Shown: positions 29,744-45,641 of the stretch, one piece after another
Layout of the letters: the number at the start of each line of letters is the position of its first letter
How positions within the stretch are numbered: the stretch's first letter is position 1
IMG/VR virus record: IMGVR_UViG_3300035181_000357
Coordinates: 146,612-210,611 of that record
Reading direction: 5' to 3' (one strand)
DNA: 64,000 nt
Notes under the pieces: model-generated
What the model saw: only the letters and a program-made list of their open reading frames with translations
What the model was told of the DNA's origin: nothing
The model's database searches: none
Made by a program: the position numbers and the translations under genes

Positions 29744-30001
29744 ATGATTCAAGAATGGGTTCTACAAACCGTCCTATGTGATGATCCAGGAGCTATGGCA
29801 GTAGATTGGGACACTTTTAATATCGGTGTGGTAGAAGATGGGGTATTCAGGTCGATATACAGTTGCTGGTGTCTCCCTGATGCAGAACATCTGTTATCAG
29901 CATTGCGTTGGTATTCCACATTCTCTAAAGATGGTATCATAAAAGAACCTGTACAACCTGTTCCTCAAACAAAGAAACGAAAGAAAGTATCTGATGTATA
30001 A
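29744..30001 (+). CDS. Hypothetical protein
   Basis: Preceded by hairpin 29701-29724 and TATTATAGAG. Confidence 0.65.
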   Translation: MIQEWVLQTVLCDDPGAMAVDWDTFNIGVVEDGVFRSIYSCWCLPDAEHLLSALRWYSTFSKDGIIKEPVQPVPQTKKRKKVSDV

Positions 30002-32441
30002 TCCTTTAACTGGTTTCGAAAATGATCCAAAGGTATCGAATTGTATTCGTGCTTTCGCTGAACATCCAGAGATTGCTGAAGAGATTAAAGCATACTATAT
30101 CCTAGAAAAGGTAGACGATGATGGATATACAGAAGACCGTCATCTCATAGCAGAAACCACCTGGAAGACTGGTGATTTCATTCATTTCACACATAAGATT
30201 GTAGGTAGAGACTTTCAAGATCCATATGAAGGTCACGAAGGTCCTACTGATGGTAGAGATTTTGAAGGTCAGTTTGCTATAATCCCAAAGAAGAGAGCAA
30301 AGAAGATCATAGATTTTCAGAAAGCTTTAGGAAAAGTTACTAAATATAGAAATCTTGAAGATATCCCAAAGAGAGAAGACATGAAGAAGAAATCTAGACT
30401 AGTGACTAAAAAATCTACCGGACCTACTTTGTATTCAAAGTTAGAAGATATCAAAAATGAAATCGATAAATATCTGAAGTGGGATCATGTCAATGACGAC
30501 ACAAATGAAGATATTCCAGAAGACAATATCACTGCCTCCTATAGACTGTATACAAAAGAAGGAATCATCATATTCTCTGTATCAGTCTTTGATAAGACGA
30601 AGAATGGAAATGAGATCTTCACCGGATTCTCTAAGCCAGGATCCGAACAATTTGAGAACACTGGTCTATATAATTTCAACAACGTGAACAAGATGCTGAA
30701 GAATGTAGCTAATGTCGCAGCTACAAAATATCATATCGAGGAAGCACCTGTCGAAGATCTTCCAGAGATGGGTAACGATGATGACAAAGAATTCCTAAAG
30801 TCGATCGGGATTCGTTCTAGTCAGAAGAAGGCATATGCTCCTAATGTAGCTCAGGCAGCTAACACTTTTTTAGAGAAATACATTGGAAAGATTCTGTCTC
30901 CGAGTGAGTTGAAGGAAGCTATATCTTCCGTATCTAGTTCCTGGAAAGATGTAGTAAACTACATGAAAGATTTCAGTTTGATAGTACCTGATGGGAATAA
31001 TTTTAAGATCTTAAATAGAGATATGGTGGATGACATGAAGATTCGTACTGGTTCAAAACATGCAGCAACTAGCCCAACTCCTCCTGGAGCTGCGTTGGTA
31101 TCAGCGATCAAAAATCGTAAACAGAACCCTGAAGATTTCGAGACATTCAAGGCCTTGTTTAATGCCTTTAAAGAAGATTTCAGTGCAACCAGCGGTCAGG
31201 AAGGATGCTACTACATCATGGAGCGTCTAGGATTCTTAGAGAAGGATATAAATCCTCTCTTAGGTTTGGGTAGTACTGGAACTCCTGAAGAGAAGTTCGT
31301 CAGAAATTATTGGGATGAAGTGAACCGTCAGTATGATGAAAAGAAGAATCAAGATCGTACTACCAAGTATGGCCCAGACTTAGTGGCTCTCTGTAAGGAA
31401 GTTTATGCCTACGCAAACCAGCCTGAGAATTACGAGAATGGCTGGGACACGGTTGCAGAAGCTTGGGACCTAGAAGAACTGGCTGAAGAGATTAAGGACT
31501 GCAAGACCTTGGATGAAGCTCTCTCGATTATGAAGCAATACAAGACAGCATCCTCAAAGACTGGTAAGCAGAAACGCTCGAGATTGATGAAGCGCAGAGC
31601 AGGGATCGAGTTAGATTGGGATCCAGCTACCAGAAGAGACATAGGTAGAGAAGAAGCCAGAGCTAGTGACAAGATCCTAAGAGATCTCGGCACATATGTA
31701 GAGAAATTAAAATCTAGCCTGATACAAAATGGTGTATCTCTTGGCCAAGCTCTATCAAACATGAATCTGAAAGAGTTATTCACCTCTACTGACTATACAA
31801 AGAGATCGCTCGGTAACAAGTTGAGATCACAGACAGAACAGTTCCTAAAGAACTATCCAGAGAAGGAACAGAACTTCTTTAAAGAGAATTATGGACAGAA
31901 CATTTCAGATATTCTAAGAAAAGTGGTAAAGACTAGTAATATAGATCCACAGATGTATGATATCAAACCTGATATCTCTCAAGATGTATTGGAGAAGAAG
32001 TCCATGGATGCAGATCGTTACTATGGTGGACCTGACGAGAGTGGTCCAGATCCCGACGAAGTTACACAAGCACTAGTCTCTAAGTTCCCAATGGCTTTAG
32101 GGTTCATTTCTCAGAAGATAGATCCTCAGAGTCCTGACTGGGATATCATGAATAAAGTCAGTGACGAGATGTATCCAAAGGAATTTATCGACAGAGTAGA
32201 GGTTGATCTTTGGGATGGTGATGACGTATACTATTTCGATTATGATGTAGACGCTTCTGAGATTGAGCAGATCAATGCCAATTTCTTGAAGAGACAACAT
32301 GAGTTGGGTTCTACGAATCCTGAACCTCTCTGCAAGCTCGAACTCGTCCCATATCACGAGCTACCCAATAAGGTCATTGAGAAGCTAGAAGAAGACTTCG
32401 AAGACTATGTGGACCTGGATCCTGAACCATGGGTTGATTAA
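29994..32441 (+). CDS. 815-aa modular acidic protein, candidate processed internal head polyprotein
   Basis: Dissimilar modules joined by K-x-A linkers (SQKKAYA, GSKHAAT, YKTASS, RLMKRRAG). Confidence 0.6.
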   Translation: MYNPLTGFENDPKVSNCIRAFAEHPEIAEEIKAYYILEKVDDDGYTEDRHLIAETTWKTGDFIHFTHKIVGRDFQDPYEGHEGPTDGRDFEGQFAIIPKKRAKKIIDFQKALGKVTKYRNLEDIPKREDMKKKSRLVTKKSTGPTLYSKLEDIKNEIDKYLKWDHVNDDTNEDIPEDNITASYRLYTKEGIIIFSVSVFDKTKNGNEIFTGFSKPGSEQFENTGLYNFNNVNKMLKNVANVAATKYHIEEAPVEDLPEMGNDDDKEFLKSIGIRSSQKKAYAPNVAQAANTFLEKYIGKILSPSELKEAISSVSSSWKDVVNYMKDFSLIVPDGNNFKILNRDMVDDMKIRTGSKHAATSPTPPGAALVSAIKNRKQNPEDFETFKALFNAFKEDFSATSGQEGCYYIMERLGFLEKDINPLLGLGSTGTPEEKFVRNYWDEVNRQYDEKKNQDRTTKYGPDLVALCKEVYAYANQPENYENGWDTVAEAWDLEELAEEIKDCKTLDEALSIMKQYKTASSKTGKQKRSRLMKRRAGIELDWDPATRRDIGREEARASDKILRDLGTYVEKLKSSLIQNGVSLGQALSNMNLKELFTSTDYTKRSLGNKLRSQTEQFLKNYPEKEQNFFKENYGQNISDILRKVVKTSNIDPQMYDIKPDISQDVLEKKSMDADRYYGGPDESGPDPDEVTQALVSKFPMALGFISQKIDPQSPDWDIMNKVSDEMYPKEFIDRVEVDLWDGDDVYYFDYDVDASEIEQINANFLKRQHELGSTNPEPLCKLELVPYHELPNKVIEKLEEDFEDYVDLDPEPWVD

Positions 32442-33380: not shown

Positions 33381-33635
33381 ATGTTCCATGGAAGTACCAG
33401 GAGTGATTTTGCTCTGAGTATGATTCAGGCTCGAGAGATGAACGTGGATCCTGAGATCATGCGATTGCTCGAAGATTTCGAAGCTGCGTACGAACGAGCT
33501 TTCAAGTTTGCGATCGAACTCAAGAAACATAAGAATTTTGAAGACATCGGTGAACTACTCCGGCTTGAACTTTTCGGAGACAAAGAAGCTATCGATGATC
33601 TCTATAAAGAAATCAAAAACCGAAAGAGGGTGTAG
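33381..33635 (+). CDS. Hypothetical protein
   Basis: 84 aa, GAGG SD. Confidence 0.6.
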   Translation: MFHGSTRSDFALSMIQAREMNVDPEIMRLLEDFEAAYERAFKFAIELKKHKNFEDIGELLRLELFGDKEAIDDLYKEIKNRKRV

Positions 33636-33636
33636 T

Positions 33637-34131
33637 TTGAAGAAGTCGCATAAGGTCATCATCCTGGCTGGTATCCCTGGTTCTGGAAAATCCACCTATA
33701 TTGAAGGTCTGATGAAGACTTTCAGTGAAGACATCTCGGTATCTATCGTGTCTGCCGATCACTATTTCATCAAGTACGGTACGTACAAGTATGTGGCACA
33801 TGATATCCCACATGCTCACAAGCAGTGTCAGAACAGGTTCTCTGACGCTCTGGACATGGACGTTGACGTTATCTTTGTAGACAACACCAACATCCTGAGT
33901 AAGCATCGCAAGCCATACGTCCAGGAGGCTCTGGATTGTGGCTATGAGGTTGAGATTCATGCTCTTCCTGCAGATGTCGAGGCTAGTGCAAGTAGGAACA
34001 TTCACGGTGTGGACCTGGATGTCTGTCAGCGAATGTTCGATTCTTTCGATCTGGAGTTTGGAACTATCTACGACCATAAGCGTCAGAAGATTGGGACTAT
34101 CACCAAGGAACAGGTAGGCTTGAGTGGCTAA
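33637..34131 (+). CDS. P-loop polynucleotide-kinase-like protein (AAA_33 type)
   Basis: GIPGSGKST, VSADHYF, VDNTN, RNIHGV. TTG start inferred. Confidence 0.8.
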   Translation: MKKSHKVIILAGIPGSGKSTYIEGLMKTFSEDISVSIVSADHYFIKYGTYKYVAHDIPHAHKQCQNRFSDALDMDVDVIFVDNTNILSKHRKPYVQEALDCGYEVEIHALPADVEASASRNIHGVDLDVCQRMFDSFDLEFGTIYDHKRQKIGTITKEQVGLSG

Positions 34132-34519
34132 ACAGCTATCATGTGGTGTCCTGGTTACACACAAGAATTCACTTCTTCTATGTCATGTAACTGGGACTTA
34201 CAATCGTTGGGATATTCCTAAAGGAATGCCTAATGATGGAGAAGATCACGTAGCTGCTGCTGTTCGAGAACTCAACGAAGAAACAGGGATTGTACTCGGT
34301 GTTAACTACAGAGAGTTGGGTTACACCGAGTACACCAAGACGAAGGATTTGTTCCTTCTCTACCATGAAGGTCTGTACGAAGTATCGGATATGACCTGTT
34401 TGTCGTTCTTTGAAGATGATCGTCCAGAGATGGATGGTTTTAGGTATTTTGATTTTAATGAAATTGTTGGCCACGTCACACCTAATCTGTATAAGGTATT
34501 GACTAAGTTCTTAGGGTGA
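34124..34519 (+). CDS. Nudix hydrolase
   Basis: WDIPKG-x5-E-x7-RELNEETGI. Confidence 0.9.
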   Translation: MAKQLSCGVLVTHKNSLLLCHVTGTYNRWDIPKGMPNDGEDHVAAAVRELNEETGIVLGVNYRELGYTEYTKTKDLFLLYHEGLYEVSDMTCLSFFEDDRPEMDGFRYFDFNEIVGHVTPNLYKVLTKFLG

Positions 34520-34522
34520 GTT

Positions 34523-35614
34523 ATGGAAAGAAAGCTAGTAACTATTAGAGAGATCGCTGCAGTGAATCCTATCCCCGATGCAGATGCCATCGAGGTGGTA
34601 ACTGTAGATGGATGGAAAGTGGTCTCCAAGAAAAATGAGTTCAAGCCAGGAGATCTCTGCCTATACTTCGAGATCGACAGCTTCCTACCTATCAAGCCAG
34701 AGTATGAGTTTCTGCGTAAGAGTAGCTACAAGAAGGTCATCGATGGTACGGAAGGATTCAGACTCAAGACCGTAAAACTGCGTGGTCAGATCAGCCAAGG
34801 TCTGGTTATGCCTATCTCAGAAGATATTCTGAAGACTCTGGCTCCAGTAGCTAGTTCGGATCTCAGGACTCTTCTGGACCAAGATCTCACCGAGTTGTTT
34901 GGTGTGACCAAGTGGGAGCCACCTCTGTCTGCCTGTCTTTCTGGGTTGGTTAAGGGTAACTTCCCATCACATACTCCGAAGTCTGGCCAGGAGCGTATCC
35001 AGAATCTGAAATACTTCTTCGAACTCTATAAAGATGAAGAGTTCGAGATGAGTCTGAAACTCGATGGAAGTTCATGCACTATGTATTTGGATCGAGAGGA
35101 TGTCTTTGGAGTCTGTTCACGTAATCTGGATCTGAAACCAGACGAGAGCAATAGCTTCTGGAAACAAGCCTATATTCATGGTGTTGAAGACAGACTCAAG
35201 ATAATTCATTCTGTATCTGGGTTGAATCTCAGTATCCAAGCTGAATTGGTTGGGGAAGGAATTCAGGAGAACCACGAGAAGATCAAGGGCCAAGATCTGT
35301 ATGTCTTCAATATCTGGGACCAACACCTCGGACGATCCTTGACCCCATCTGAACGACATGCTACACTGGATGCTCTAAACGATCTCCAGGTCTTAGGTTC
35401 CAAGCCACTTAAACATGTCCCTGTAATTGGGTATGAGAAGGTCTTCACCAAGTATCAGACACTAGAAGCTCTCTTTGAATTCGTGGAAAGCCTAGCTGGG
35501 ATGAATCCTGGTGTAATCCTCGAAGGCGTAGTGTTCAAGAGTGTAAGACCTATAAATGGTAGCATTGTAAGCTTTAAGATCGTCAGCAATAAGTACCTTC
35601 TTTCCAAGAAATAA
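34523..35614 (+). CDS. RNA ligase, Rnl2-like (DRB0094 type) with N-terminal OB domain
   Basis: IPDADAIE N-terminus, KLDGSS (motif I), CSRN, QAELVG, FNI, EGVVFK, FKIVSNKYLL. Confidence 0.88.
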   Translation: MERKLVTIREIAAVNPIPDADAIEVVTVDGWKVVSKKNEFKPGDLCLYFEIDSFLPIKPEYEFLRKSSYKKVIDGTEGFRLKTVKLRGQISQGLVMPISEDILKTLAPVASSDLRTLLDQDLTELFGVTKWEPPLSACLSGLVKGNFPSHTPKSGQERIQNLKYFFELYKDEEFEMSLKLDGSSCTMYLDREDVFGVCSRNLDLKPDESNSFWKQAYIHGVEDRLKIIHSVSGLNLSIQAELVGEGIQENHEKIKGQDLYVFNIWDQHLGRSLTPSERHATLDALNDLQVLGSKPLKHVPVIGYEKVFTKYQTLEALFEFVESLAGMNPGVILEGVVFKSVRPINGSIVSFKIVSNKYLLSKK

Positions 35615-35617
35615 GAA

Positions 35618-35647
35618 TTGTCTGATTTACGAATTATTAAGTAACCT
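35618..35647 (+). promoter_or_regulatory. Early-type promoter ahead of the tRNA array
   Basis: TTGTCT-N18-TAACCT. Confidence 0.65.
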
Positions 35648-35985
35648 AATAATGCCCGACGAAGTTTGCCCTGAAACCAAGTTAGAAATTTCTTGTTCAG
35701 AGCCTGGTTGGTTGGGTAATAAGTGAAGTGAAGCGGCTGAGGCCACCCTGCTCTCTGAAAAATCAATAACTTAATGGTATCGAACGCATCCGAGATTCAG
35801 GTCTCCGATGCTGAGATGAAACCACTACCTTTCCTGAATCTTAGAAATAAGGCTGTCGTGAGACTGCCTGTTTCCGTATGATTGCAGGAGGTTCCAACAA
35901 AATGTGGTCGCAGTTTATGGATGAAACTGCAGATATCTAGTATATGCCTGGTTCTCGATGATCCTATAAAATCGAAAACGAATTT

Positions 35986-36101
35986 GATCCCATAGCTCAG
36001 TTGGACAGAGCAACAGCCTTATCGCACTCCTGACCAGGTGGGTTTGGAACTGCATGGCTCTAAGCTGTAGGTCGCTGGTTCGAGCCCAGCTGGGATCACC
36101 A
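35986..36101 (+). tRNA. tRNA (probably Arg-UCU) with 39-nt insert in anticodon loop
   Basis: All four stems and CCA intact; removing 36021-36059 gives loop CT-TCT-AA; A20 present. Confidence 0.8.
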
Positions 36102-36589
36102 AATTGGTTTCTGGATAGTGTGGCAATGCTGATACTGTTGGTTAGACCTGATACCAACAAAATACCGCTTCTAAGTAGTTGTAGCGGGTAGTCGGATAAC
36201 TACTAGACTCCGACATGTTAACGCTGTTGAAGAGTCCATAACACTTGGTAGCATTACCTAAGTGGCGCGGAGTTTGGACACTGTTAGCTAAACCGCCTAA
36301 TGCTAACAAATACATCTTGGGGAATACTCTCCAGTTCATAATGAAAGATGGTAGTAGGATAGAAACGGGCTAACTCCTACATGTTAACGCTGTTGAGTCT
36401 ATCTTGGTGGGCATCGCTCCCACCAAGATAGACTGTTTTACCTCCTGTCTGAATCGCCCTGATCTCGTGGTACCTGAACTTTATGTCCATCTATATCCTG
36501 CAAATGAACTGTAGACATGGCTACCATCAGGGTTTCGAGACTCAGATCATAGGTATAGAATACTGTATTCAGTGGAGTACCACGATCCT
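36102..36589 (+). ncRNA. Structured non-coding block A (tandem motif, long hairpins)
   Basis: No credible ORF; many helices, including a perfect 15-bp hairpin at 36396-36432. Confidence 0.55.
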
Positions 36590-36664
36590 GTGGCCTTAGC
36601 TCAACGGTAGAGCATCGCCCTTTTAAGGCGAGGGTTGTGGGTTCGAGTCCCACAGGCCACACCA
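36590..36664 (+). tRNA. tRNA-Lys(UUU)
   Basis: Canonical cloverleaf, TCGCC-CTTTTAA-GGCGA, CCA. Confidence 0.95.
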
Positions 36665-37030
36665 TCCGAGGTGGGTTAAGCGTCACTGTGATGGCAGTAC
36701 GGATACCCACAGCATAAACTGCATGATGCTGGTCTTTACCTCCCGATAGTAGAATCTCGAAAGAGACTACTATTATACCCGACAAACCATTCCACTACTG
36801 ACATAGTGGAAACATAAATCGGAGCCGTGTCAGCGGTAATGCGGAACATGAACTATTTGTTGCGATAGTCGTGAGTTCGCCGGGAGTTATTAAATCCCCA
36901 TGTGATGGCTCGTATTAGAGCGAAGGATGCGTAAGCACCCAACAGGCTGAAGATAACACAGCGTATCATATGTTTTTGTTTTAGGAGAGCCCTGTCAGAA
37001 CTCTTCGGAGGAGGGTTAGACTCCCTATTA
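36665..37030 (+). ncRNA. Structured non-coding block B
   Basis: Helices capped by GAAA, GTAA and TTCG tetraloops. Confidence 0.6.
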
Positions 37031-37032
37031 AT

Positions 37033-37108
37033 AGCCCTATAGCTCAGCGGTCAGAGCTGACGGCTCATAACCGTCTGGTCCTAGGTTCGAACCCTAGTGG
37101 GGCTACCA
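37033..37108 (+). tRNA. tRNA(CAU), Ile2/Met elongator type
   Basis: GACGG-CTCATAA-CCGTC, CCA. Confidence 0.9.
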
Positions 37109-37109
37109 A

Positions 37110-37568
37110 ATCGTTTACTAGTTCGATTCTAATAAAAACTAGTCGAGGGGGATGGGTGAAGAATGCTGGTCTCAGGATAGAGACTATTCCCATCGGGTGA
37201 GACCTTATCCAATCTCTTCCTGCAGGAGCCGCGTAAAAAAGTCAAAAGAACCTTGGTGCTACACTATGCGCGAGTTATTGATAAAATCAATAGCGTCTCC
37301 TTTATGGATAGCGGTAGGAATTCGCTGCAAAATCCAAGGCTACCCTACTTAGGCATGCGGTAGGGTAAATTTCTCGAAATCTCAGGTTTCGTTGAACTAC
37401 GAAGTAACTGTACCGTAGTGAGGAATCTGTGACAGCGACATGGGTCGGGCCATGGCTGGCGACACCAGCTAAAAAGATGTTCCTGTGGGAAGGGTAACGT
37501 ATACTTTCTTCAGAAGACGTGCCAGTCCGGCTGGTGTCCAGCATGTATCTACCTCTACTGGACTTAAA
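37110..37568 (+). ncRNA. Structured non-coding block C
   Basis: Dense helices and alternative pairings, no credible ORF. Confidence 0.55.
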
Positions 37569-37653
37569 GCTCCCATGGCGGAATTGGTAGACGCTACGGA
37601 CTTAAAATCCGTCGCCTATGGGCATCCCGGTTCGACTCCGGGTGGGAGCACCA
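37569..37653 (+). tRNA. tRNA-Leu(UAA)
   Basis: Class II cloverleaf, CCA. Confidence 0.95.
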
Positions 37654-37832
37654 AACTGTTCTCTGTTACAGTCTTAACAGAGTGGTCCAGGCGGGGAAAT
37701 TCCCCATCCGTAGTCCCTATGCTACAGAAGGTCATAGGGTGGTGGAGGCGGTGTGACCTCGGTCATGCTTCTAGGTGTCGGGTGCGTAAGCAACATGACT
37801 CGAGTCAGATCCTCTAAGTCTGACATATTTCT

Positions 37833-38170
37833 GGGCCTGACAAGGTTTCGACAGGTTGTTAGCTTGGGATTGCGGTGCAGGGACTGGTTGATCAGCAGGC
37901 CAGTATAAAAGCAGATCAAACTTTAATTGCCGAGCCACAGCTCGCACTAGCAGCTTAAACACTGCTACGAGGAACCGCGAGAGGACAGTAGCGGGGAATC
38001 GTCACCACCGTCCTAGTTTCTACTAAGAGTTCGGGTAAGTAGGAGCGAAACTACGCGATCAAACGATAGTAGGCTGTCAGTCGCCGACCTATCGAGACCA
38101 GACTGACTAACCCTGTGAATGACTTCAATACAACTCTTCTTGGACGTGGGTTCGAATCCCACCAGGTCCA
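37833..38170 (+). ncRNA. ssrA: tmRNA, tag AEPQLALAA
   Basis: GGGCCTG..GGTTTCGAC 5' end, T arm, G3.U70 pair, tag ORF 37929-37958; CCA not encoded. Confidence 0.93.
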
Positions 38171-38676
38171 CATCGGTAGACTTCCTAGTTCTTACGGAGA
38201 ATAGGAACATGGAAGTCTACCATACAACCCTCTAAGATAATGGATGGACAAGAGGTAGGAAATTCCCTAGCGATAGGGATTAAGATCGGCGAGTGCCGAT
38301 ATACGGAGGTAGTTATGGCTACTGAACCAGAGGACAACGACGGTCTACTCGGGACCGAGCGTGAATCAGATGAAGAAGGTTGTCCAGATTATGACAAGGA
38401 CGACGACGAGTAACACTGTACCATAATACCGGGGATGGGGACGACAGGCCCATACAAAGCAGATCCATAGTGTAAAAACTATGGGTGATGAAAGTCTGCC
38501 ATGTCAGTTGATTCTCTAGACTGACAAACCTTAAGTTGGATGCAAACGGAAGACGACTCGCCATCGACCCCAGGCACATGGGGAACCACGGCCTTTCCCA
38601 GATAGCGTAGTGGCCCTACGACGATGCGTGGAAGGTGGGATTATTCCCTTAAAAGCACTGTGTCATCCAACTACTT
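38171..38676 (+). ncRNA. Structured non-coding block E
   Basis: Many helices, including long-range GTTGGATG/CATCCAAC. Confidence 0.55.
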
Positions 38677-38754
38677 GATCCCATCGTCTAAACTGGTTTA
38701 GGACAGTAGCCTCTCAAGCTGCAGATCCGGGTTCGAATCCCGGTGGGACCACCA
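38677..38754 (+). tRNA. tRNA-Glu(CUC)
   Basis: GTAGC-CTCTCAA-GCTGC, CCA. Confidence 0.9.
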
Positions 38755-38756
38755 AG

Positions 38757-38843
38757 GCCGAGGTGCCAGAGTGATTGAATGGGCAGGTTTTGTAATCCTG
38801 TAGAGAAATCTCGTCATGGGTTTGAATCCCATCCTCGGCTCCA
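38757..38843 (+). tRNA. tRNA-Thr(UGU) with long variable arm
   Basis: Loop TT-TGT-AA, G1-C72/C2-G71, U73, V-arm GAG-AAAT-CTC. Confidence 0.75.
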
Positions 38844-39011
38844 ATCAAAATTTATTTCATAAAAGTTATCTTCCAGAGATTGTAGTTCGTAATTAATGAA
38901 TTATGTGGTCATGGCCACGCGAATTCCCTTTGACAATTTCATAGAGATCAAGCACACGAGCTCTGCTGTAGAGTCTAACGATTCTGGCACACATGCCGTG
39001 TGTATTTATTA

Positions 39012-39096
39012 GGTAGGGTGGACAATGGTCGTCAAGCGGCTTTGAATACCGTCGCTCCGAGAGGAGTTGCAGGTTCGAATCCTGTCCCTACCGCCA
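39012..39096 (+). tRNA. tRNA-Ser(UGA)
   Basis: Long V-arm, G73, CCA. Confidence 0.9.
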
Positions 39097-39105
39097 ATCT
39101 TTAAT

Positions 39106-39183
39106 GGCCCAGTACGCTAATTGGCAGATGCGGTAAGTTTCAAAAACTTGTGGTTGTCGGTTCGAATCCGACTTGGGCTACCA
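39106..39183 (+). tRNA. tRNA-Leu(CAA), short variable loop
   Basis: TAAGT-TTCAAAA-ACTTG, A73, CCA. Confidence 0.8.
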
Positions 39184-39185
39184 AT

Positions 39186-39274
39186 GGAAGATCGGCACAG
39201 TTGGAGAGGTGCGCCAGTTTGCTAAACTGGTAGATGTAACAGTCTAGAGGGTTCGATTCCCTTATCTTCCGCCA
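39186..39274 (+). tRNA. tRNA-Ser(GCU)
   Basis: CCAGT-TTGCTAA-ACTGG, long V-arm, G73. Confidence 0.93.
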
Positions 39275-39467
39275 AAGTCGTCGCTCGCAAAGCGGAGAGA
39301 GGTAAGTAAGACAGATTAATGGTCTAGAACATCCTGTCAGAGAATACCTTGTAGGTTCAAATCCTACCTTGACAACAATACGCAACGCCATAGAAAAGCC
39401 TTCATCTTAATAGGGATGGGGGGGAAACCCTCGCTGGCTTTTCACCACTTTCGTTGCATTCTTATTA

Positions 39468-39541
39468 CGGTCACTGGCGCAGCCTGGTAGCGCACCTGCT
39501 TTGGGAGCAGGGGGTCGAGTGTTCGAATCACTCGTGGCCGA
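39468..39541 (+). tRNA. tRNA-Pro(UGG), no encoded CCA
   Basis: CTGCT-TTGGGAG region, C1-G72, canonical D arm. Confidence 0.88.
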
Positions 39542-39580
39542 CATCGTGATCTAGACTTAGGTTTAGATCACACAATATCT

Positions 39581-39657
39581 CGGGGTGAAAGTGAGCCTGG
39601 TACACGGTCTGGTTTGGAACCAGAAGATCGTCGGTTCAAATCCGACCTCCCCGACCA
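39581..39657 (+). tRNA. tRNA-Pro(UGG), second divergent copy
   Basis: TCTGG-TTTGGAA-CCAGA, CCA. Confidence 0.85.
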
Positions 39658-39692
39658 ATATCAAACTTTATAATTATATGTAGAGGACTATC

Positions 39693-40049
39693 ATGTTCAA
39701 AGCTAAACTACTAAAGACTGCATCAAGTCCACAATTGACTCTGGCTCAACAAGTCTATGCTCAACATAAGGCAGAGATAGATCCTAAGATTTTCAAGGCT
39801 GCTGACTATGTAGTTGATAATGCTATCGATCTAGATTCTGAAACTGCAGATAATCATCTATTTGGTGATGCTATATTTGAGCCATGGTTTGAAGCCAGCC
39901 CAGAATATCTCAGTATGACAGAAGAATCTGGGAACGAAGATGACGAGACCGATTATATTGGTGGTGTCTGGGAACAAGTTCTGTCTACAAATCCAAAGTA
40001 TAAAGATGTCGTAGCTAAATTTGCTGACATCAGAATCAATGGATATTAA
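39693..40049 (+). CDS. Acidic hypothetical protein starting MFKAKLLKTAS, inserted in the tRNA array
   Basis: AGAGG SD and late-type motif upstream. Confidence 0.75.
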   Translation: MFKAKLLKTASSPQLTLAQQVYAQHKAEIDPKIFKAADYVVDNAIDLDSETADNHLFGDAIFEPWFEASPEYLSMTEESGNEDDETDYIGGVWEQVLSTNPKYKDVVAKFADIRINGY

Positions 40050-40055
40050 TATCAT

Positions 40056-40134
40056 GGAGTGCTAGGGGAGTCAGGCCGTCCCCAGTTGCTTGTCACGCAA
40101 CAGATCACGGGTTCGAATCCCGTGCACTCCGCCA
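40056..40134 (+). tRNA. tRNA-Asp(GUC)
   Basis: GTTGC-TTGTCAC-GCAAC, G73, CCA. Confidence 0.92.
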
Positions 40135-40254
40135 TTCTCTCTAGAAATAGAGGATCATGAGTTGGGTAGAATCCACGTCTGAGGGACGTTAGGTGTCTGC
40201 TGTGCTGCAGCGAGAAACCCCACTAGCAGACCCTGTCTCATGATCAAATATCAT

Positions 40255-40331
40255 GCTCCGTATGCTGAAGTTGTCGAGGCGTTGGTCTGCAAAACCAATC
40301 TTAGCCAGTTCAAGTCTGGCACGGAGCTCCA
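40255..40331 (+). tRNA. tRNA-Cys(GCA)
   Basis: TTGGT-CTGCAAA-ACCAA, U73, CCA. Confidence 0.93.
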
Positions 40332-40360
40332 AATTCGTAATGCCCTTTAGAAGCTTTCAT

Positions 40361-40453
40361 CCACTATAAGGACGTTATCGGAGGTTCGAATCCTCCTCCC
40401 GGAACCAATATCTTATTTTTCATTCCGGGATAGCTTAGTGGCCTAAAGCACGT
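40361..40453 (+). ncRNA. Circularly permuted tRNA-like gene (3' half before 5' half)
   Basis: T arm, TCCCGGA-A-CCA, 16-nt linker, TCCGGGA, D arm, CGT. Confidence 0.75.
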
Positions 40454-40493
40454 AAAAGAGCTTTTTTACTATTTTCATTGCGAAGCCTATTAT

Positions 40494-40579
40494 GGTCCAG
40501 GAGTCCAACGGTTGAGACAGCACGCTGTTAACGTGCCGCTGTAAAAGCACATAGGGTTCAACTCCCTACTGGATCGCCA
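40494..40579 (+). tRNA. tRNA-Asn(GUU) with long variable arm
   Basis: GCACG-CTGTTAA-CGTGC, V-arm GCT-GTAAA-AGC, G73. Confidence 0.85.
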
Positions 40580-40630
40580 TCGGGTAATGATCCCAAGAGA
40601 TATATCAAAGAAGCAAATGAATTTATCCAT

Positions 40631-40718
40631 GCATCAGCGGCAGAGTTGGAGGGCTGCAACGGTCTGTAAAACCGTCGGGTTGATCCCCTAGTAGGTTCGA
40701 GTCCTACCTGATGCACCA
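40631..40718 (+). tRNA. tRNA-Tyr(GUA)
   Basis: ACGGT-CTGTAAA-ACCGT, long V-arm. Confidence 0.93.
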
Positions 40719-40720
40719 AA

Positions 40721-40795
40721 GTCGATAGTGGACGAGGGACGTCCGGGAGTCTTCTAAACTCCATTCTCCGGGTTCGAGTCCTGGTATCGACACCA
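40721..40795 (+). tRNA. tRNA-Arg(UCU), intact
   Basis: GGAGT-CTTCTAA-ACTCC, CCA. Confidence 0.88.
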
Positions 40796-40799
40796 ATTT

Positions 40800-40891
40800 C
40801 CCGGTGTGATGTACGGTTGCATAGGTGGCTTTATACCCCACTCGCGCCAGATTAGCGCCTTGTTAGGGTTCGACTCCCTACGCCGGGACCA
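40800..40891 (+). tRNA. Atypical class II tRNA, anticodon ambiguous (UUA possible)
   Basis: Acceptor, D, V and T arms and CCA present; anticodon arm GGTGG-CTTTATACC-CCACT. Confidence 0.6.
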
Positions 40892-40969
40892 ATTCTTGAT
40901 AACGCCTTCGAATCAGGTTTCATCCATTAAATGAAAAGCCTGTTCATCCTGTTCTTCGTTATCATCCAC

Positions 40970-41043
40970 TGCGCTGTCGTCTAGTGATAAGGCAAGAGAC
41001 TTTGACTCTCTGAACGTAGGTTTGATTCCTGCCAGCGTAACCA
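40970..41043 (+). tRNA. tRNA-Gln(UUG)
   Basis: U1-A72, AGAGA-CTTTGAC-TCTCT. Confidence 0.9.
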
Positions 41044-41165
41044 TCGATTAACTTTCTTTTGAGAGTTCATCAAAATATCATCATCAGTATACTTCCAACC
41101 TGTTGGTAAAATAGAAGGGCTGTTGATGTTAGCACGACTGTTCGACTCAGCCTCGTGCGAAATAT

Positions 41166-41240
41166 GGGCTATAGGAATTAAAGGTTGTTCGCATGACTGA
41201 AAATCATGAGGAGGCGGTTCGATACCGTCATAGCCCACCA
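41166..41240 (+). tRNA. tRNA-Phe(GAA)
   Basis: CATGA-CTGAAAA-TCATG, CCA. Confidence 0.88.
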
Positions 41241-41242
41241 AC

Positions 41243-41322
41243 GTCCGGGTACGCAAATCTGGCAAAGCGACTATCCTCAGAAGGTAGTGACTCTGTGGGT
41301 TCGACTCCCACCTCGGACACCA
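41243..41322 (+). tRNA. tRNA-Leu(CAG), short variable loop
   Basis: CTATC-CTCAGAA-GGTAG, CCA. Confidence 0.85.
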
Positions 41323-41403
41323 ATCAATGCAGATGTACGCTATCTGGTATCTCGGAAATCCTGAAAAGGTTGTGTTTTTAGCACACCGTAACAGGCTTCC
41401 ATC

Positions 41404-41490
41404 GCGGATATGGTGGAACTTGGTAGACACGCAGCTTTGAGATGGCTGTCCCGAAAGGGGGTGGGGGTTCGAGTCCCCCTATCCGCACCA
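41404..41490 (+). tRNA. tRNA-Leu(GAG)
   Basis: Class II cloverleaf, CCA. Confidence 0.92.
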
Positions 41491-41588
41491 ATGTTAGGGG
41501 TTAATGCGGTAGCTGACGCAAGAAACAGTCGCTTCCCCAACATGGAGAGAATCTTGCGTGACTCTCCTCACCTTGTGCGATAAAATAT

Positions 41589-41662
41589 GGGTCCTTAGTT
41601 AAGCGGGATAACTTCTGGTTTGCATCCAGACATCGGGAGTTCGATTCTCCCAGGATCCACCA
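41589..41662 (+). tRNA. tRNA-Ala(UGC)
   Basis: G3.U70, TCTGG-TTTGCAT-CCAGA. Confidence 0.92.
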
Positions 41663-41665
41663 TAT

Positions 41666-41749
41666 GGGGCTGAAGTGACTTTGGTAAGCACACCGTTAGG
41701 GCGTACGCCGAACGGAGGTTATGGGTTCGATTCCCGTCATGTTCCACCA
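41666..41749 (+). tRNA. Ala-identity tRNA-like RNA with masked anticodon (6-nt insert)
   Basis: G3.U70, A73-CCA, D and T arms; arm CCGTT-AGGGCGT-ACGCCG-AACGG. Confidence 0.65.
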
Positions 41750-41755
41750 ATCAAT

Positions 41756-41841
41756 GCATCGGACGCAGAACTGGTTGCTGCCCCAGACTCTTAATCTGGT
41801 TCCTAACGGACTTGGGGGTTCGAATCCCCTCCGATGCACCA
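41756..41841 (+). tRNA. tRNA-Lys(CUU) with long variable arm
   Basis: CCAGA-CTCTTAA-TCTGG, V-arm TCC-TAAC-GGA, A73. Confidence 0.85.
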
Positions 41842-41847
41842 AATATC

Positions 41848-41924
41848 AAGGAGTTGGCCGAGGCTGGCATAGGCGATGGTTTGTGGTACCATACACAGGG
41901 GTTCGAATCCCCTACTCCTGACCA
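41848..41924 (+). tRNA. tRNA-His(GUG), A73 and no G-1
   Basis: ATGGT-TTGTGGT-ACCAT, CCA. Confidence 0.8.
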
Positions 41925-41978
41925 ATTTTTAGGATGTTTTAAACTTCCTGATGCTACTATAGTGAATATGGAGTTTAA

Positions 41979-42977
41979 ATGTCCCATGATAATTATGTCG
42001 TAAAGGTTGGAAACGATTATGTAGAAAGAAGTGCCTTTGTAATCGCTGATTCTACAGATCCTCTTGCTGTTGCTCGTGTTACTAACACTGCTCCTGGAGC
42101 TAGTGATTATGGCGTAGTAGTCAGAATGATCGGTACTGTCTCTGTCACTGGTGGTGGCGGTGGTGCTGTCTATGGACCTTCGTCCCTAGGTGTGGTATTA
42201 TCAAATCCTCCAGTAGCAATTGGTGGAGTTGATGCTGGAGGCTTGTTAAGAGTTATCAGGACTGACGCTGCTGGATATGGGCTAAACATGATTACCAATG
42301 GTACGCAGTTCATGCCCACCATGGATGCTGCGGCTCGTCGTGGTTACATGACTCACACAGATGGTACGAACTCCATGCCAACTGGTGATGCTGTTGCTCG
42401 TGGTATTTATCATCGTATTACGGATGGTGTTACACAAGTGGCCGTTAAAGCAGCTTCGACTGCTGCTGTCGCTGCTGATCCTGCCTTGGTAGTAGCGCTG
42501 TCTCCAAACAATAACACTGCTGCCCTAGCCTGGTTTGAGAAGATCACTGATGGAACAAATACTGCAGCTGTTAAAGCTTCTACTACTGTAGCTGCTATTA
42601 CTGATCCTGCCTTGGTTACGACTCTGAGTCCTAACCTTCCTGTTCCAACGATGAGCACTATCTCATCTGCTGCGACAACGAATGCTACATCTGTTAAAGC
42701 ATCTGCTGGAACCGTATTCAATATCGTATGTTCTAATACTGGTGCTGCTGCTGCGTATGTCAAGTTCTACAACAAGGCTTCTGCTCCTACAGTCGGTACA
42801 GATGTTCCTGTATTTACATTGACCATTCCAGCTTCTGGCTCAGTAATAATCCCTGCATCGTTGATTGGTATTAGATTTGCTACTGGTATTGCTCTGGCAA
42901 TTACCAATTTAGCAGCTGATTCTGATACAACGGCTGTAGTCTTAAATCAAGTCAAAGTAATGACATCCTATATTTAA
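41979..42977 (+). CDS. Ala/Thr-rich repeat protein, probable fibre/decoration protein, inside the tRNA array
   Basis: Repeats ITDG..AVKA(A/S)T..A..DPALV..LSPN and MPT.DA.AR.G. Confidence 0.7.
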   Translation: MSHDNYVVKVGNDYVERSAFVIADSTDPLAVARVTNTAPGASDYGVVVRMIGTVSVTGGGGGAVYGPSSLGVVLSNPPVAIGGVDAGGLLRVIRTDAAGYGLNMITNGTQFMPTMDAAARRGYMTHTDGTNSMPTGDAVARGIYHRITDGVTQVAVKAASTAAVAADPALVVALSPNNNTAALAWFEKITDGTNTAAVKASTTVAAITDPALVTTLSPNLPVPTMSTISSAATTNATSVKASAGTVFNIVCSNTGAAAAYVKFYNKASAPTVGTDVPVFTLTIPASGSVIIPASLIGIRFATGIALAITNLAADSDTTAVVLNQVKVMTSYI

Positions 42978-42995
42978 TAGGATGGTGGTACTACT

Positions 42996-43069
42996 GCGGG
43001 TGTAGCTCAACGGTAGAGCTCCTGGTTTCCACCCAGATGACGAGGGTTCAATTCCCTTCACCCGCTCCA
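42996..43069 (+). tRNA. tRNA-Gly(UCC)
   Basis: GCGGGTG acceptor, U73, CCA. Confidence 0.95.
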
Positions 43070-43080
43070 TTTTTCTCCAT

Positions 43081-43158
43081 AGAGGGTAACGCGAAGTGGT
43101 TGAGCGGCCAGCCTTTCAAGCTGTCGATTAGCGGGTTCAAATCCCGTACCCTTTACCA
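43081..43158 (+). tRNA. tRNA-Glu(UUC)
   Basis: Loop CT-TTC-AA, CCA. Confidence 0.88.
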
Positions 43159-43186
43159 AAGATTCTAAATTTTCGTTGAATTTTAT

Positions 43187-43263
43187 GTCCCCATAGCTGA
43201 GTCTGGCCTTAGCACCGTTCTACGAAAGCGGAGACACTGGTTCAAATCCAGTTGGGGATACCA
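43187..43263 (+). tRNA. tRNA-Arg(ACG)
   Basis: CCGTT-CTACGAA-AGCGG. Confidence 0.9.
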
Positions 43264-43266
43264 ATT

Positions 43267-43341
43267 GCCAGCAAACCCGAATGGTGAGGGGGATGTCTCA
43301 TAAGCATCTTGTCAAGGGTTCGAATCCCTTTGTTGGCACCA
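43267..43341 (+). tRNA. tRNA(CAU) Met/Ile2
   Basis: GATGT-CTCATAA-GCATC, CCA. Confidence 0.88.
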
Positions 43342-43346
43342 CCAAT

Positions 43347-43434
43347 GGAAGATCGCCGAAGTCGGAGCGTCGGAACAGCCTGGAAAGTTGTGGCCGTCAA
43401 AGGCCAGAGAGTTCGAATCTCTCATCTTCCGCCA
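43347..43434 (+). tRNA. tRNA-Ser(GGA)
   Basis: Long V-arm, G73. Confidence 0.92.
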
Positions 43435-43561
43435 TTGAAGAAGAAGAATAAGAATAAGAAGGGTGACCAGAGCGTGATTAATCTGGTTTCATAAAGGTGA
43501 GCTTCCTACATCTTATAAAGATGCACTGCTCGTTACTGTCAGTTCTCAGAAATAAGTTTAT

Positions 43562-43635
43562 TCCAGATTCATTCAAAGGTAGGATGGGAGTTTCTGAAGC
43601 TCTTAATGATGGTTCGAATCCATCATCTGGATCCA
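43562..43635 (+). tRNA. tRNA-Gln(CUG)
   Basis: U1-A72, loop TT-CTG-AA. Confidence 0.85.
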
Positions 43636-43669
43636 TCTAGTGTGTAGCATACATCTATATTTAATCTAT

Positions 43670-43743
43670 TGACCTGTAACTCAATGGCAGAGTAATCGAC
43701 CGATAATCGATAAATGGCAGTTCGAATCTGCCCAGGTCAACCA
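43670..43743 (+). tRNA. tRNA-Ile(GAU) with C33
   Basis: ATCGA-CCGATAA-TCGAT. Confidence 0.88.
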
Positions 43744-43777
43744 ATCCTCTTAGATTTAAATACCAAATAGGAGTAGT

Positions 43778-43918
43778 ATGCAGTTACTAGGTGTGATATC
43801 CATAGTAATCTTCAGCTTATGGTTAGTCTTCAGAAAGAAGAAATGCCATGACTGTGCTAATTCCTTCTGTAAGAATGGGTCTGTGGTGCTAGCGGGAACA
43901 CGCTTGAATGGCATTTAA
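43778..43918 (+). CDS. 46-aa membrane/Cys peptide overlapping tRNA-Ala(GGC)
   Basis: TAGGAG SD; MQLLGVISIVIFSLWLVFRKKKCHDCANSFCKNG... Confidence 0.45.
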   Translation: MQLLGVISIVIFSLWLVFRKKKCHDCANSFCKNGSVVLAGTRLNGI

Positions 43919-43951
43919 GAGTTAAGGGTTCGACTCCCTTCAGATCCACCA
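43877..43951 (+). tRNA. tRNA-Ala(GGC)
   Basis: G3.U70, A32-U38, CCA. Confidence 0.88.
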
Positions 43952-43954
43952 ATA

Positions 43955-44023
43955 CATCCGATATCAAACGGTCAGATACCAGACTTTTAATCTGGAGAGG
44001 CTTGACTCCCACCGGGTGCCCCA
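43955..44023 (+). pseudogene. Degenerate tRNA-Lys(UUU)
   Basis: CCAGA-CTTTTAA-TCTGG intact but T arm eroded. Confidence 0.55.
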
Positions 44024-44039
44024 GTTCTTGTTGGTTCAT

Positions 44040-44114
44040 GGCCCTTTAGCTCAGTGGTAGAGCGGCTTCTTTACACGGAGAAGGTCGGCGGTTCAATCCC
44101 GTCAAGGGCTACCA
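44040..44114 (+). tRNA. tRNA-Val(UAC)
   Basis: Loop TT-TAC-AC, canonical D and T arms. Confidence 0.9.
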
Positions 44115-44118
44115 AAAT

Positions 44119-44191
44119 CGGGAGATAGCTTAAGTGGTAGAGCGGTCTTTGCGCAAGATAGATGGTGCTTCGAGAGCATCTCTCCCGGCCA
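44119..44191 (+). tRNA. tRNA-Arg(GCG), rare isoacceptor
   Basis: Loop TT-GCG-CA, G73, CCA. Confidence 0.7.
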
Positions 44192-44195
44192 ATAT

Positions 44196-44270
44196 GCCTC
44201 ATTAACTCAGCGGAAGAGTTCTGGTCTTCGAAACCAGCAGTCGGCGGTTCGAATCCGTCATGAGGCACCA
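44196..44270 (+). tRNA. tRNA-Arg(UCG)
   Basis: CTGGT-CTTCGAA-ACCAG. Confidence 0.92.
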
Positions 44271-44306
44271 ACTTCGATGTATTATAATGTAAAGTATCTT
44301 TGAAAT

Positions 44307-44385
44307 TGCGGGTGGACTGGTCGGCAATCAGGCGATGTCTCATAAGCATTGTAAAACGGAGGTTCAACTCCCCGACCCGCTACCA
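44307..44385 (+). tRNA. Atypical tRNA-Met(CAU) with 1:72 mismatch and bulged T stem
   Basis: Loop CT-CAT-AA, ACCA end. Confidence 0.65.
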
Positions 44386-44444
44386 AATTTGCAGTACCCT
44401 CTCTTCCAGCTTTATACAGCCGCTAGCTGGACGGCTTTAGCCCC

Positions 44445-45629: not shown

Positions 45630-45641
45630 TAACTAGTTACT

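What the first reader, a model, noticed from the sequence alone, without database searches (positions are those of the whole stretch)
35986..36101. tRNA with a 39-nt intron-like insert in the anticodon, first in the array after the RNA ligase gene
Seen: all stems are intact and CCA is encoded, but the loop reads CT-T[39 nt]CT-AA. Excision gives Arg(UCU) (A20 supports Arg); an alternative register gives Ile(UAU). The insert is far too short for a group I intron and shows no clear bulge-helix-bulge; its 3' end (TGCATGGCT) can pair back on AGCC..ATCGCA. The kinase, Nudix and Rnl2-like ligase genes end about 370 bp upstream. An intact Arg(UCU) exists at 40721. Inference: a phage protein-spliced tRNA intron, or an anticodon-nuclease decoy.
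Basis: partly seen in the sequence, partly recalled or inferred. Interest (0 to 1): 0.82.

Follow-up and report, generated by a model that had tools for sequence, protein, structure and literature searches.

The report
Short intron in phage tRNA-Arg gene
A jumbo-phage tRNA-Arg(UCU) gene is split in its anticodon loop by a 39-base hairpin insert that fits no known intron type; a related phage has a similar insert in tRNA-Lys, so this looks like a small new family of phage tRNA mini-introns, but nobody has yet shown that they are spliced.

Summary
Window 35986-36101 is a complete tRNA (Rfam 58 bits) with 39 extra bases in the anticodon loop, and independent DNA assemblies contain the insert. A related phage carries the same tRNA without the insert, 76 of 77 bases identical. 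This fixes the product as tRNA-Arg(UCU), not Ile, and the insert as 36021-36059.

A second related phage has a 40-base insert in its only tRNA-Lys(UUU). It has the same layout: RUCGCNC, a hairpin, then an 11-base tail, with a 3-bp closing helix that covaries.

The insert is not a group I intron, has no bulge-helix-bulge motif and matches no Rfam ribozyme. It is single-copy, and I found it nowhere else.

The neighbouring ligase is Rnl5-type (nick-sealing), not Rnl2. The window also encodes a kinase, a cyclic-phosphate-processing domain, RlaP and a CCA-adding enzyme. I found no splicing endonuclease.

My best reading (about 0.45) is a real, protein-processed mini-intron. The rivals are a recently disrupted gene (a second Arg(UCU) gene exists), an unspliced decoy and a ribozyme.

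Splicing was not tested: the only RNA run did not cover the site. Unexplained introns in megaphage tRNAs were reported in 2019, but they are longer and unrelated in sequence.

The parts
35986..36020 (+). 5' exon of tRNA-Arg(UCU): acceptor 5' strand, D arm, anticodon stem 5' strand, and loop bases C32 U33 U34
   Evidence: Rfam RF00005 alignment; ARAGORN with introns allowed; identical to L007:12061-12095 except base 2
36021..36059 (+). 39-base insert (mini-intron). Layout: AUC 36021-36023; 3-bp helix 5' strand GCA 36024-36026; C 36027; hairpin 36028-36048 (8 pairs with one U-U and one G-U, loop AGGUG); AC 36049-36050; helix 3' strand UGC 36051-36053; tail AUGGCU 36054-36059. Because T repeats at both boundaries, the register 36020-36058 gives the same product.
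   Evidence: Absent from the orthologue in L007; constrained folds; same layout in L006:5447-5486; single copy in the window
36060..36101 (+). 3' exon: C35 U36 A37 A38, anticodon stem 3' strand, variable loop, T arm, acceptor 3' strand, encoded ACCA
34523..35614 (+). Rnl5-family ATP-dependent RNA ligase (N-terminal OB domain plus nucleotidyltransferase domain)
   Evidence: Pfam PF21189 + PF09414; PDB 5cot NgrRnl E = 2e-68 over residues 3-360; homologues named TIGR02306
34124..34519 (+). Nudix hydrolase
   Evidence: PF00293 E = 1e-14
33508..34131 (+). P-loop kinase (AAA_33 / zeta-toxin-like), candidate polynucleotide 5'-kinase
   Evidence: PF13671 E = 2.5e-11; inference from the linkage to the ligase, conserved in L005 and L007
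20315..20671 (+). cREC_REC domain protein (cyclic-phosphate-processing receiver domain), candidate 2',3'-cyclic-phosphate healing enzyme
   Evidence: PF20274, 31.6 bits against a cut-off of 27; role taken from PMC7824862
40721..40795 (+). Second, uninterrupted tRNA-Arg(UCU) with an unusual D arm; not seen at this position in relative L238
35615..35910 (+). Conserved non-coding RNA between the ligase and the tRNA array, present in all four related phages. No role in processing the insert has been shown.
   Evidence: alignments A1 and A5; a 238-base RNA contig of a relative covers 35661-35895 in run X1; no Rfam match

Best explanation
35986-36101 is a tRNA-Arg(UCU) gene carrying a 39-base member of a small family of hairpin mini-introns, inserted between anticodon bases 34 and 35.

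Proposed mechanism. The gene is transcribed with the array as a 116-base precursor that keeps the cloverleaf. The insert forms a short rod (a 3-bp helix plus a 7-8-bp hairpin) projecting from an enlarged anticodon loop. To give the tRNA that the intronless orthologue encodes, the RNA must be cut after U34 (3 bases 5' of the rod) and before C35 (6 bases 3' of the rod), and the halves rejoined. I infer that a protein endonuclease, not yet identified and either phage- or host-encoded, makes the two cuts. The phage's own RNA-repair enzymes (cyclic-phosphate-processing domain, kinase, Rnl5 ligase) or a host RtcB would then heal and seal the ends.

Shown: the gene, the exact junction, the insert's fold, and a homologous insert in another tRNA. 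Inferred: transcription, cleavage, ligation, and which enzymes do them.
For: (1) Removing 36021-36059 gives a 77-base tRNA identical at 76 of 77 positions to the uninterrupted gene L007:12061-12137, and the one difference turns G2-U71 into A2-U71.
(2) L006:5412-5527 is a tRNA (Rfam 52.1 bits) with a 40-base insert. Its removal gives loop CUUUUAA and a tRNA homologous to the window's tRNA-Lys(UUU), with mostly compensatory stem changes.
(3) The two inserts share length (39 and 40), the 5' motif RUCGCNC, a hairpin of different sequence, an 11-base tail ANNGCNUG, and a 3-bp closing helix that changes GCA:UGC to GCU:AGC. Their sequence alignment beats 98% of shuffles.
(4) Both known copies lie in anticodon loops of different tRNAs. 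The motif occurs nowhere else in about 115 kb of these phages. This argues against random insertion.
(5) In L238 the interrupted gene is the only tRNA-Lys(UUU) among 27 tRNAs.
(6) AGA is the commonest Arg codon in the window's ORFs, at 34%.
(7) The window encodes heal-and-seal components: kinase, Nudix and Rnl5 ligase, cREC_REC, RlaP and CCA-adding enzyme.
(8) Precedent: unexplained introns in megaphage tRNAs (PMC6784885).
Against: There is no RNA evidence. The single RNA run held only a relative's contigs, and none crossed the insert.

I recognised no splicing endonuclease or RtcB among about 80 window ORFs scanned. About 146 kb of the contig was not examined.

Rnl5 ligases need a nicked duplex (PMC1807946, PMC4408790), which a broken anticodon loop is not.

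The window has a second Arg(UCU) gene that relative L238 lacks, as would be expected if the first gene had been lost.

The Arg allele differs from L007's by one base, while tRNA-Leu(UAA) differs at 20 of 85. The insert's gain or loss is therefore recent, and intact exons prove little.

Only two members are known, so the covariation evidence is thin.
Confidence: 0.45

Rival explanations
1. The tRNA gene is dead or dying. A small selfish or accidental 39-base insertion recently disrupted the anticodon loop, the RNA is not spliced, and the second Arg(UCU) gene at 40721 (or the host) supplies the function.
For: The second, divergent Arg(UCU) gene is present only in this phage. The insertion is recent relative to the L007 allele. 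119 of 121 environmental copies of this tRNA's 5' half are uninterrupted and none carries this insert. No endonuclease was found. Mobile elements are active nearby: a GIY-YIG gene splits the ligase in L007, and HNH and intein elements lie in the window.
Against: A second, diverged copy of the same kind of insert sits in the only tRNA-Lys(UUU) of a distant relative (65% ligase identity) and has kept its fold. Both copies lie in anticodon loops and nowhere else, which is not expected of a neutral or harmful insertion.
Confidence: 0.25
2. The unspliced 116-base RNA is itself the product. It would be a tRNA-shaped decoy or ligand, for example for a host anticodon nuclease, for the phage Ro60-like protein, or for a modification enzyme.
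For: The phage encodes a Ro60-like RNA-binding protein. It and its relatives encode several non-decoding tRNA-like RNAs (L005:11516-11660, L006:4922-5054, window 40372-40455). Lys(UUU) and Arg tRNAs are classic anticodon-nuclease targets (PMC7824862, PMC10264068).
Against: A decoy for an anticodon nuclease should keep the normal loop, and here the loop is the one part destroyed. The body is a near-exact copy of a working tRNA-Arg, not a specialised scaffold. No data point to binding.
Confidence: 0.12
3. The insert is a minimal self-cleaving or self-splicing RNA. Its ends are then joined by the repair enzymes or by reversal of the cleavage.
For: The fold is conserved and close to both junctions. 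The 5' exons end in U in both cases, and the L006 insert ends in G, as in group I introns. A group I intron interrupts the same tRNA-Arg at or next to this point of the anticodon loop in another genome (L145; the exact junction is not resolved).
Against: There is no Rfam ribozyme match even at E up to 1-10. 39 bases is too few for two cleavage sites. The window insert does not end in G. No hammerhead, twister or pistol core motifs are visible.
Confidence: 0.08

Closest known systems
'Enigmatic' introns in Lak megaphage tRNAs (Devoto et al. 2019, PMC6784885)
   Same: These are inserts in anticodon loops of tRNA genes of very large phages. They have no Rfam classification, were defined by comparing genes with and without the insert, are patchily distributed among related genomes, and have no known mechanism.
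   Different: Lak introns are 79-114 bases long, were called after position 37, and several contain a T-arm-like hairpin or a whole tRNA-like unit (Table S6). The insert here is 39-40 bases, lies at 34/35 or 35/36, has a different motif (RUCGCNC ... ANNGCNUG), and belongs to an unrelated phage lineage.
Archaeal and eukaryal protein-spliced tRNA introns (bulge-helix-bulge, EndA/Sen endonuclease, RtcB or Trl1 ligase)
   Same: They are short (14-100 bases), lie in the anticodon loop, have no ribozyme core, and would need an endonuclease plus ligase. The yeast-type heal-and-seal chemistry matches the enzymes encoded here.
   Different: No bulge-helix-bulge can be drawn at either register. The position is not 37/38. 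No EndA homologue was seen in the window. The ligase is Rnl5, not RtcB or Trl1.
Bacterial and phage group I introns in tRNA anticodon loops
   Same: The same site class is used: the same tRNA-Arg(UCU) is interrupted at or next to this loop position by a group I intron in L145. The 5' exon ends in U, and distribution is sporadic.
   Different: Group I introns need about 200 bases or more and a P3-P9 core. Here there are 39 bases and no Rfam match.
T4 Pnkp/Rnl1 tRNA repair, and jumbo-phage RNA repair modules (PMC7824862)
   Same: A kinase, a phosphoesterase and an ATP-dependent RNA ligase are encoded next to phage tRNA genes, with RlaP and a CCA-adding enzyme nearby.
   Different: Those systems reseal host-inflicted breaks and are not known to splice. 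The ligase here is Rnl5 rather than Rnl1 or Rnl2.

Membership tests
tRNA (Rfam RF00005) | Full cloverleaf scoring above the curated threshold | tested here: met
   58.1 bits against 29, model positions 1-71, with the insert looped out
tRNA-Arg(UCU) | Anticodon UCU after removal of the insert; an orthologue without the insert | tested here: met
   L007:12061-12137 is 76 of 77 identical and has loop CUUCUAA; A20 is present in the D-loop
Bulge-helix-bulge tRNA intron | Two 3-base bulges carrying the splice sites, separated by a 4-bp helix | tested here: not met
   I checked both registers of the window insert and the unambiguous L006 insert by hand against the folds. The only 4-bp helix (AGCC:GGCU) puts the 3' site at the helix end, not in a bulge, and it is absent in L006.
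Bulge-helix-bulge tRNA intron | Canonical position 37/38 | tested here: not met
   The positions are 34/35 (Arg) and 35/36 (Lys), taken from intronless orthologues
Bulge-helix-bulge tRNA intron | EndA/Sen-type endonuclease encoded by the genome or host | tested here: inconclusive
   No such Pfam family was found among the window ORFs scanned. The rest of the 210-kb contig and the host were not examined.
Group I intron | Conserved catalytic core (Rfam RF00028), at least about 200 bases | tested here: not met
   The insert is 39 bases, and there is no match at E up to 1 in 35600-36600
Known small self-cleaving ribozymes | Match to an Rfam ribozyme model | tested here: not met
   No match at E up to 1 (window) or up to 10 (L006)
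Lak-type megaphage tRNA introns | Sequence or structural similarity to the published Lak introns | tested here: not met
   Compared by eye with Table S6: different length, position and motifs. They share only the general phenomenon.
Rnl5 RNA ligase (the neighbouring gene) | N-terminal OB module plus adenylyltransferase domain, full-length similarity to NgrRnl/DraRnl | tested here: met
   PF21189 + PF09414; 5cot_A E = 2e-68, residues 3-360
Multi-copy mobile hairpin element (REP/MITE-like) | Several copies, mostly intergenic | tested here: not met
   There is one copy in the window at up to 3 mismatches. The motif occurs only in the two tRNA inserts across the window, L005, L007 and L238. None was found in IMG/VR with a T-arm anchor.

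The most novel reading that the evidence does not exclude
These 39-40-base hairpin inserts are a new class of mobile tRNA mini-introns of jumbo phages. A phage-encoded endonuclease that measures from the intron's own rod excises them, and the phage's kinase, cyclic-phosphate-processing protein and Rnl5 ligase reseal the exons. This would be the first protein-dependent tRNA splicing pathway in the bacterial and phage world, and a physiological substrate for an Rnl5 ligase.
Probability: 0.3. Interest if true: 0.87.

Novelty: new variant of a known kind. Interest (0 to 1): 0.64.

Why it matters
Outside group I ribozymes, bacteria and their viruses are thought to lack tRNA splicing. The introns reported in Lak megaphage tRNAs in 2019 are still unexplained.

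This case is unusually easy to work with. The insert is 39 bases. Its junction is fixed to the base by an intronless orthologue. A second family member shows which features are conserved. A full set of RNA end-healing and sealing genes lies close by.

If the insert is spliced, it would reveal a new RNA-processing pathway and a natural role for Rnl5 ligases, whose function is unknown. It might also show how phages shield tRNA genes or precursors from nucleases.

If it is not spliced, it documents how phage tRNA genes are lost and replaced.

It also shows that default bacterial tRNA finders miss such genes.

Tried and rejected
1. Ile(UAU) reading: rejected, because the intronless orthologue reads Arg(UCU).

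2. Bulge-helix-bulge motif: none can be drawn in either example (checked by hand).

3. Known ribozymes or group I: no Rfam match.

4. Guide or splint RNA for the nick-sealing ligase. The conserved ncRNA has a stretch complementary to the exon junction (window about 35841-35862, -15.4 kcal/mol), but 0.8% of all windows in 17 kb do as well. The best site in L238 lies in a non-homologous part of the ncRNA. I treat this as chance.

5. Further family members:
- The exact-exon pattern with a gap found only the source contig in IMG/VR.
- The motif plus T-arm pattern gave 107 hits, all ordinary tRNAs.
- The metagenome scan with an ncRNA motif gave nothing.
- The scan with the Arg 5' half gave 121 hits, none with this insert.
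- The junction scan of 185,579 species genomes gave 16 chance hits in coding DNA.

6. RNA evidence. One metatranscriptome (X1) held only a relative's contigs away from the insert. The 'skips 39' joint seen in DNA runs X2 and X5 has only 27 matching bases on one side, and its loose ends belong to other organisms' tRNA-Arg. It is not an intronless allele of this phage.

7. A candidate endonuclease. The conserved 815-residue protein at 29994-32441 has no Pfam, PHROG, NCBIfam or ESM-Atlas lead.

8. INPHARED phage genomes: no near match to 34000-38500.

9. Exon conservation as proof of function: discounted, because the Arg allele is shared with L007 far more closely than the rest of the genome.

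Full report
**Source and setting**

The window comes from IMGVR_UViG_3300035181_000357, a 210,611-bp viral contig. It has no near relative among deposited phage genomes. Positions 35986-49039 hold an array of more than 42 tRNA genes and a tmRNA. The genes use the standard code and are densely packed.

**Checking the observation**

- The Rfam tRNA model matches 35986-36098 over its full length at 58.1 bits, with the anticodon loop expanded by about 42 bases.
- ARAGORN misses the gene by default. With introns allowed it calls tRNA-Arg(tct) with a 39-base intron.
- From the sequence: acceptor GATCCCA/TGGGATC, D arm GCTC/GAGC with loop AGTTGGACA, anticodon stem ACAGC/GCTGT, T arm GCTGG/CCAGC, and an encoded ACCA.
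- The insert is present, with no differences, in a 12-kb contig of an independent assembly of DNA run X2. Three further DNA runs hold the sampled words at shares of 0.91, 0.89 and 0.46.

**What the mature tRNA is**

The ligase has only four close relatives among 5.8 billion proteins. I fetched their contigs as L005, L006 (extended as L238) and L007/L008.

All share the same gene order: Ro60-like protein, unknown proteins, kinase, Nudix, ligase, a conserved non-coding stretch, Arg(UCU), Lys(UUU), Leu(UAA), and (in L005 as in the window) a tmRNA. In the relatives a tRNA-like RNA also sits between the non-coding stretch and Arg(UCU).

L007:12061-12137 is an uninterrupted tRNA-Arg(UCU). It is identical to the window's two exons at 76 of 77 positions, and the single change improves pair 2:71. 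This gives three results:
- The insert is exactly 36021-36059, or 36020-36058, because T repeats at both ends.
- The product has the loop CUUCUAA.
- The Ile(UAU) reading is wrong.

**A second example**

L006:5412-5527 is a tRNA (Rfam 52.1 bits) with 40 extra bases in the loop. Removing GTCGC...GTAG leaves CUUUUAA. The result is a tRNA homologous to the window's tRNA-Lys(UUU) at 36590, with mostly compensatory stem changes. Here the junction is unambiguous, at 35/36.

With the anticodon stem enforced, both inserts fold the same way:
- three single-stranded bases (AUC or GUC);
- a 3-bp helix (GCA:UGC in the window, GCU:AGC in L006, a double change that keeps the pair);
- one bulged C;
- a 7-8-bp hairpin of unrelated sequence;
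- two bases;
- the other strand of the helix;
- six single-stranded bases.

The shared pattern RUCGCNC-N(18-25)-ANNGCNUG occurs only in these two places in the window, L005, L007 and L238 on both strands. A plain global alignment of the two inserts scores above 98% of shuffles. In L238 the interrupted gene is the only Lys(UUU) among 27 tRNAs.

**What the insert is not**

- It is not a group I intron or any Rfam ribozyme.
- It has no bulge-helix-bulge in any register.
- It is not at 37/38.
- It is not a multi-copy element.
- It was not found in IMG/VR, in 121 environmental copies of this tRNA, or in 185,579 species genomes.

One environmental copy of the same tRNA (L145) is interrupted at or next to this loop position by a group I intron. 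This part of the anticodon loop is therefore a known intron site.

**The neighbouring genes**

- The ligase is a full-length Rnl5. This family seals 3'-OH/5'-phosphate nicks in duplexes, and its biological role is unknown (PMC5397189, PMC4408790).
- Upstream lie a P-loop kinase and a Nudix hydrolase.
- Elsewhere in the window are a cREC_REC cyclic-phosphate-processing domain, a metallophosphatase, RlaP and a CCA-adding enzyme, a Ro60-like RNA-binding protein, and NAD salvage genes.

This is the jumbo-phage RNA-repair repertoire described in PMC7824862. It is present in relatives with and without inserts. It therefore shows capacity for healing and sealing, not a link to splicing. No EndA, RtcB or other obvious endoribonuclease was recognised.

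**Arguments for a real intron**

- A neutral or harmful insertion would not be expected twice, only in anticodon loops, in two different tRNAs of phages whose ligases are 65% identical, with its fold kept while the hairpin sequence changed.
- The interrupted Lys(UUU) is that phage's only copy.
- AGA is the phage's commonest Arg codon.

**Arguments against**

- The Arg allele is shared with L007 almost exactly, while tRNA-Leu(UAA) is 76% identical and the flanks do not align. The gain or loss is therefore recent, and intact exons carry little weight.
- This phage alone has an extra Arg(UCU) gene at 40721.
- No enzyme for the cuts is known.
- Rnl5 is not an obvious loop ligase.
- No RNA data exist. 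Run X1 holds a relative's ncRNA and tmRNA but nothing across the insert. The 39-base 'skip' in DNA runs belongs to other organisms' tRNA-Arg.

**Comparison with the literature**

Devoto et al. reported that Lak megaphage tRNAs contain 'enigmatic introns', stated that phage tRNA introns had not been reported before, and suggested they may be common in large phages (PMC6784885). Their Table S6 shows introns of 79-114 bases after position 37, some with tRNA-like parts and none with an Rfam match. The insert here is far shorter, differently placed and unrelated in sequence. I found no paper that explains any of them.

**Verdict**

The Arg reading and the insert's boundaries are settled. The insert belongs to a small, previously undescribed family.

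| Reading | Confidence |
|---|---|
| Spliced mini-intron (protein-processed) | about 0.45 |
| Recently inactivated gene | 0.25 |
| Unspliced functional RNA | 0.12 |
| Ribozyme | 0.08 |

The question can be settled at the bench with simple RNA assays.

Noticed in passing
window 35615-35910 (also L005:10620-11060, L007:10806-11131, L006:4526-4873): A non-coding stretch of about 300 bases directly after the ligase is conserved in all four related phages. It has long invariant blocks and a predicted long-range helix (AGGTA : TACCT), and matches no Rfam family. A 238-base RNA contig of a close relative covers 35661-35895 in a freshwater metatranscriptome. It is probably a new structured RNA linked to the RNA-repair genes.
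   Followed up: partly
window 40372-40455: This is a permuted tRNA-like element: T arm, an 8-bp acceptor-like stem closed by an 18-base loop, D arm, and a closing ACGU:ACGU stem. It matches the tRNA-like core of Rfam YrlA (Y RNA-like) at 25.9 bits, below the threshold of 69. A Ro60-like protein is encoded at 26303-27823, so this is a candidate phage Y RNA.
   Followed up: partly
L005:11516-11660, L007:11347-11491, L006:4922-5054: These 133-145-base tRNA-shaped RNAs have acceptor, D and T arms but no CCA. A 59-70-base branched rod replaces the anticodon loop and contains GTCGCT(C/A)C, the same motif as the 5' end of the mini-introns. They sit first after the ncRNA in the relatives and are absent from the window. 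ARAGORN assigns inconsistent anticodons, so they are probably not decoding tRNAs.
   Followed up: partly
window 38757-38843, 40494-40579, 40800-40891, 41756-41841: tRNA-Thr(UGU), Asn(GUU), Ile(UAU) and Lys(CUU) are 86-92 bases long and have long variable arms. That feature is normally restricted to Leu, Ser and bacterial Tyr tRNAs.
   Followed up: no
window 45642-45717: A tRNA with anticodon CUA (an amber suppressor, labelled 'Pyl' by ARAGORN) is present, although the window's ORFs read well in the standard code.
   Followed up: no
window 39350-39380, 41666-41749, 47161-47324: Orphan T-arm and acceptor-like pieces lie outside called tRNAs. One begins GGGGCTGA like a tmRNA 5' end and has G3-U70. 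Another sits at the 3' end of the pentapeptide-repeat ORF.
   Followed up: no
L154 (JAEEGL010321151.1) 734-849, 10541-10661, 11134-11248, 11564-11682, 11686-11808, 12110-12297: An unrelated phage-like contig with 46 tRNAs and a tmRNA has several tRNAs of about 115-188 bases. In two of them Rfam shows 55-58 bases replacing the anticodon arm region. Three of them share the motif ACAGCAGA. This is another family of tRNA inserts that default tRNA finders miss.
   Followed up: partly
L145:12205-12464 (OCVV012856487.1): The same tRNA-Arg(UCU) 5' half is followed, at or next to the same loop position, by a group I intron (partial Rfam match, cut off by the end of the locus).
   Followed up: partly
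L007:8739-10747 and L008:1304-3312: In this relative a GIY-YIG homing-endonuclease gene splits the Rnl5 ligase gene into an OB-domain ORF and a nucleotidyltransferase ORF.
   Followed up: no
window 58014-60461 (- strand): An IMP dehydrogenase/GMP reductase-like gene is in two pieces. A weak intein-splicing match lies at the start of the second piece, and an HNH endonuclease ORF is adjacent.
   Followed up: no
window 36207-36230 and 36373-36396; 36396-36434: A 24-base direct repeat (96% identical, 166 bases apart) and a 16-bp perfect hairpin lie in the 490-base gap between tRNA-Arg and tRNA-Lys. Relatives in DNA run X6 show rearrangements here.
   Followed up: no
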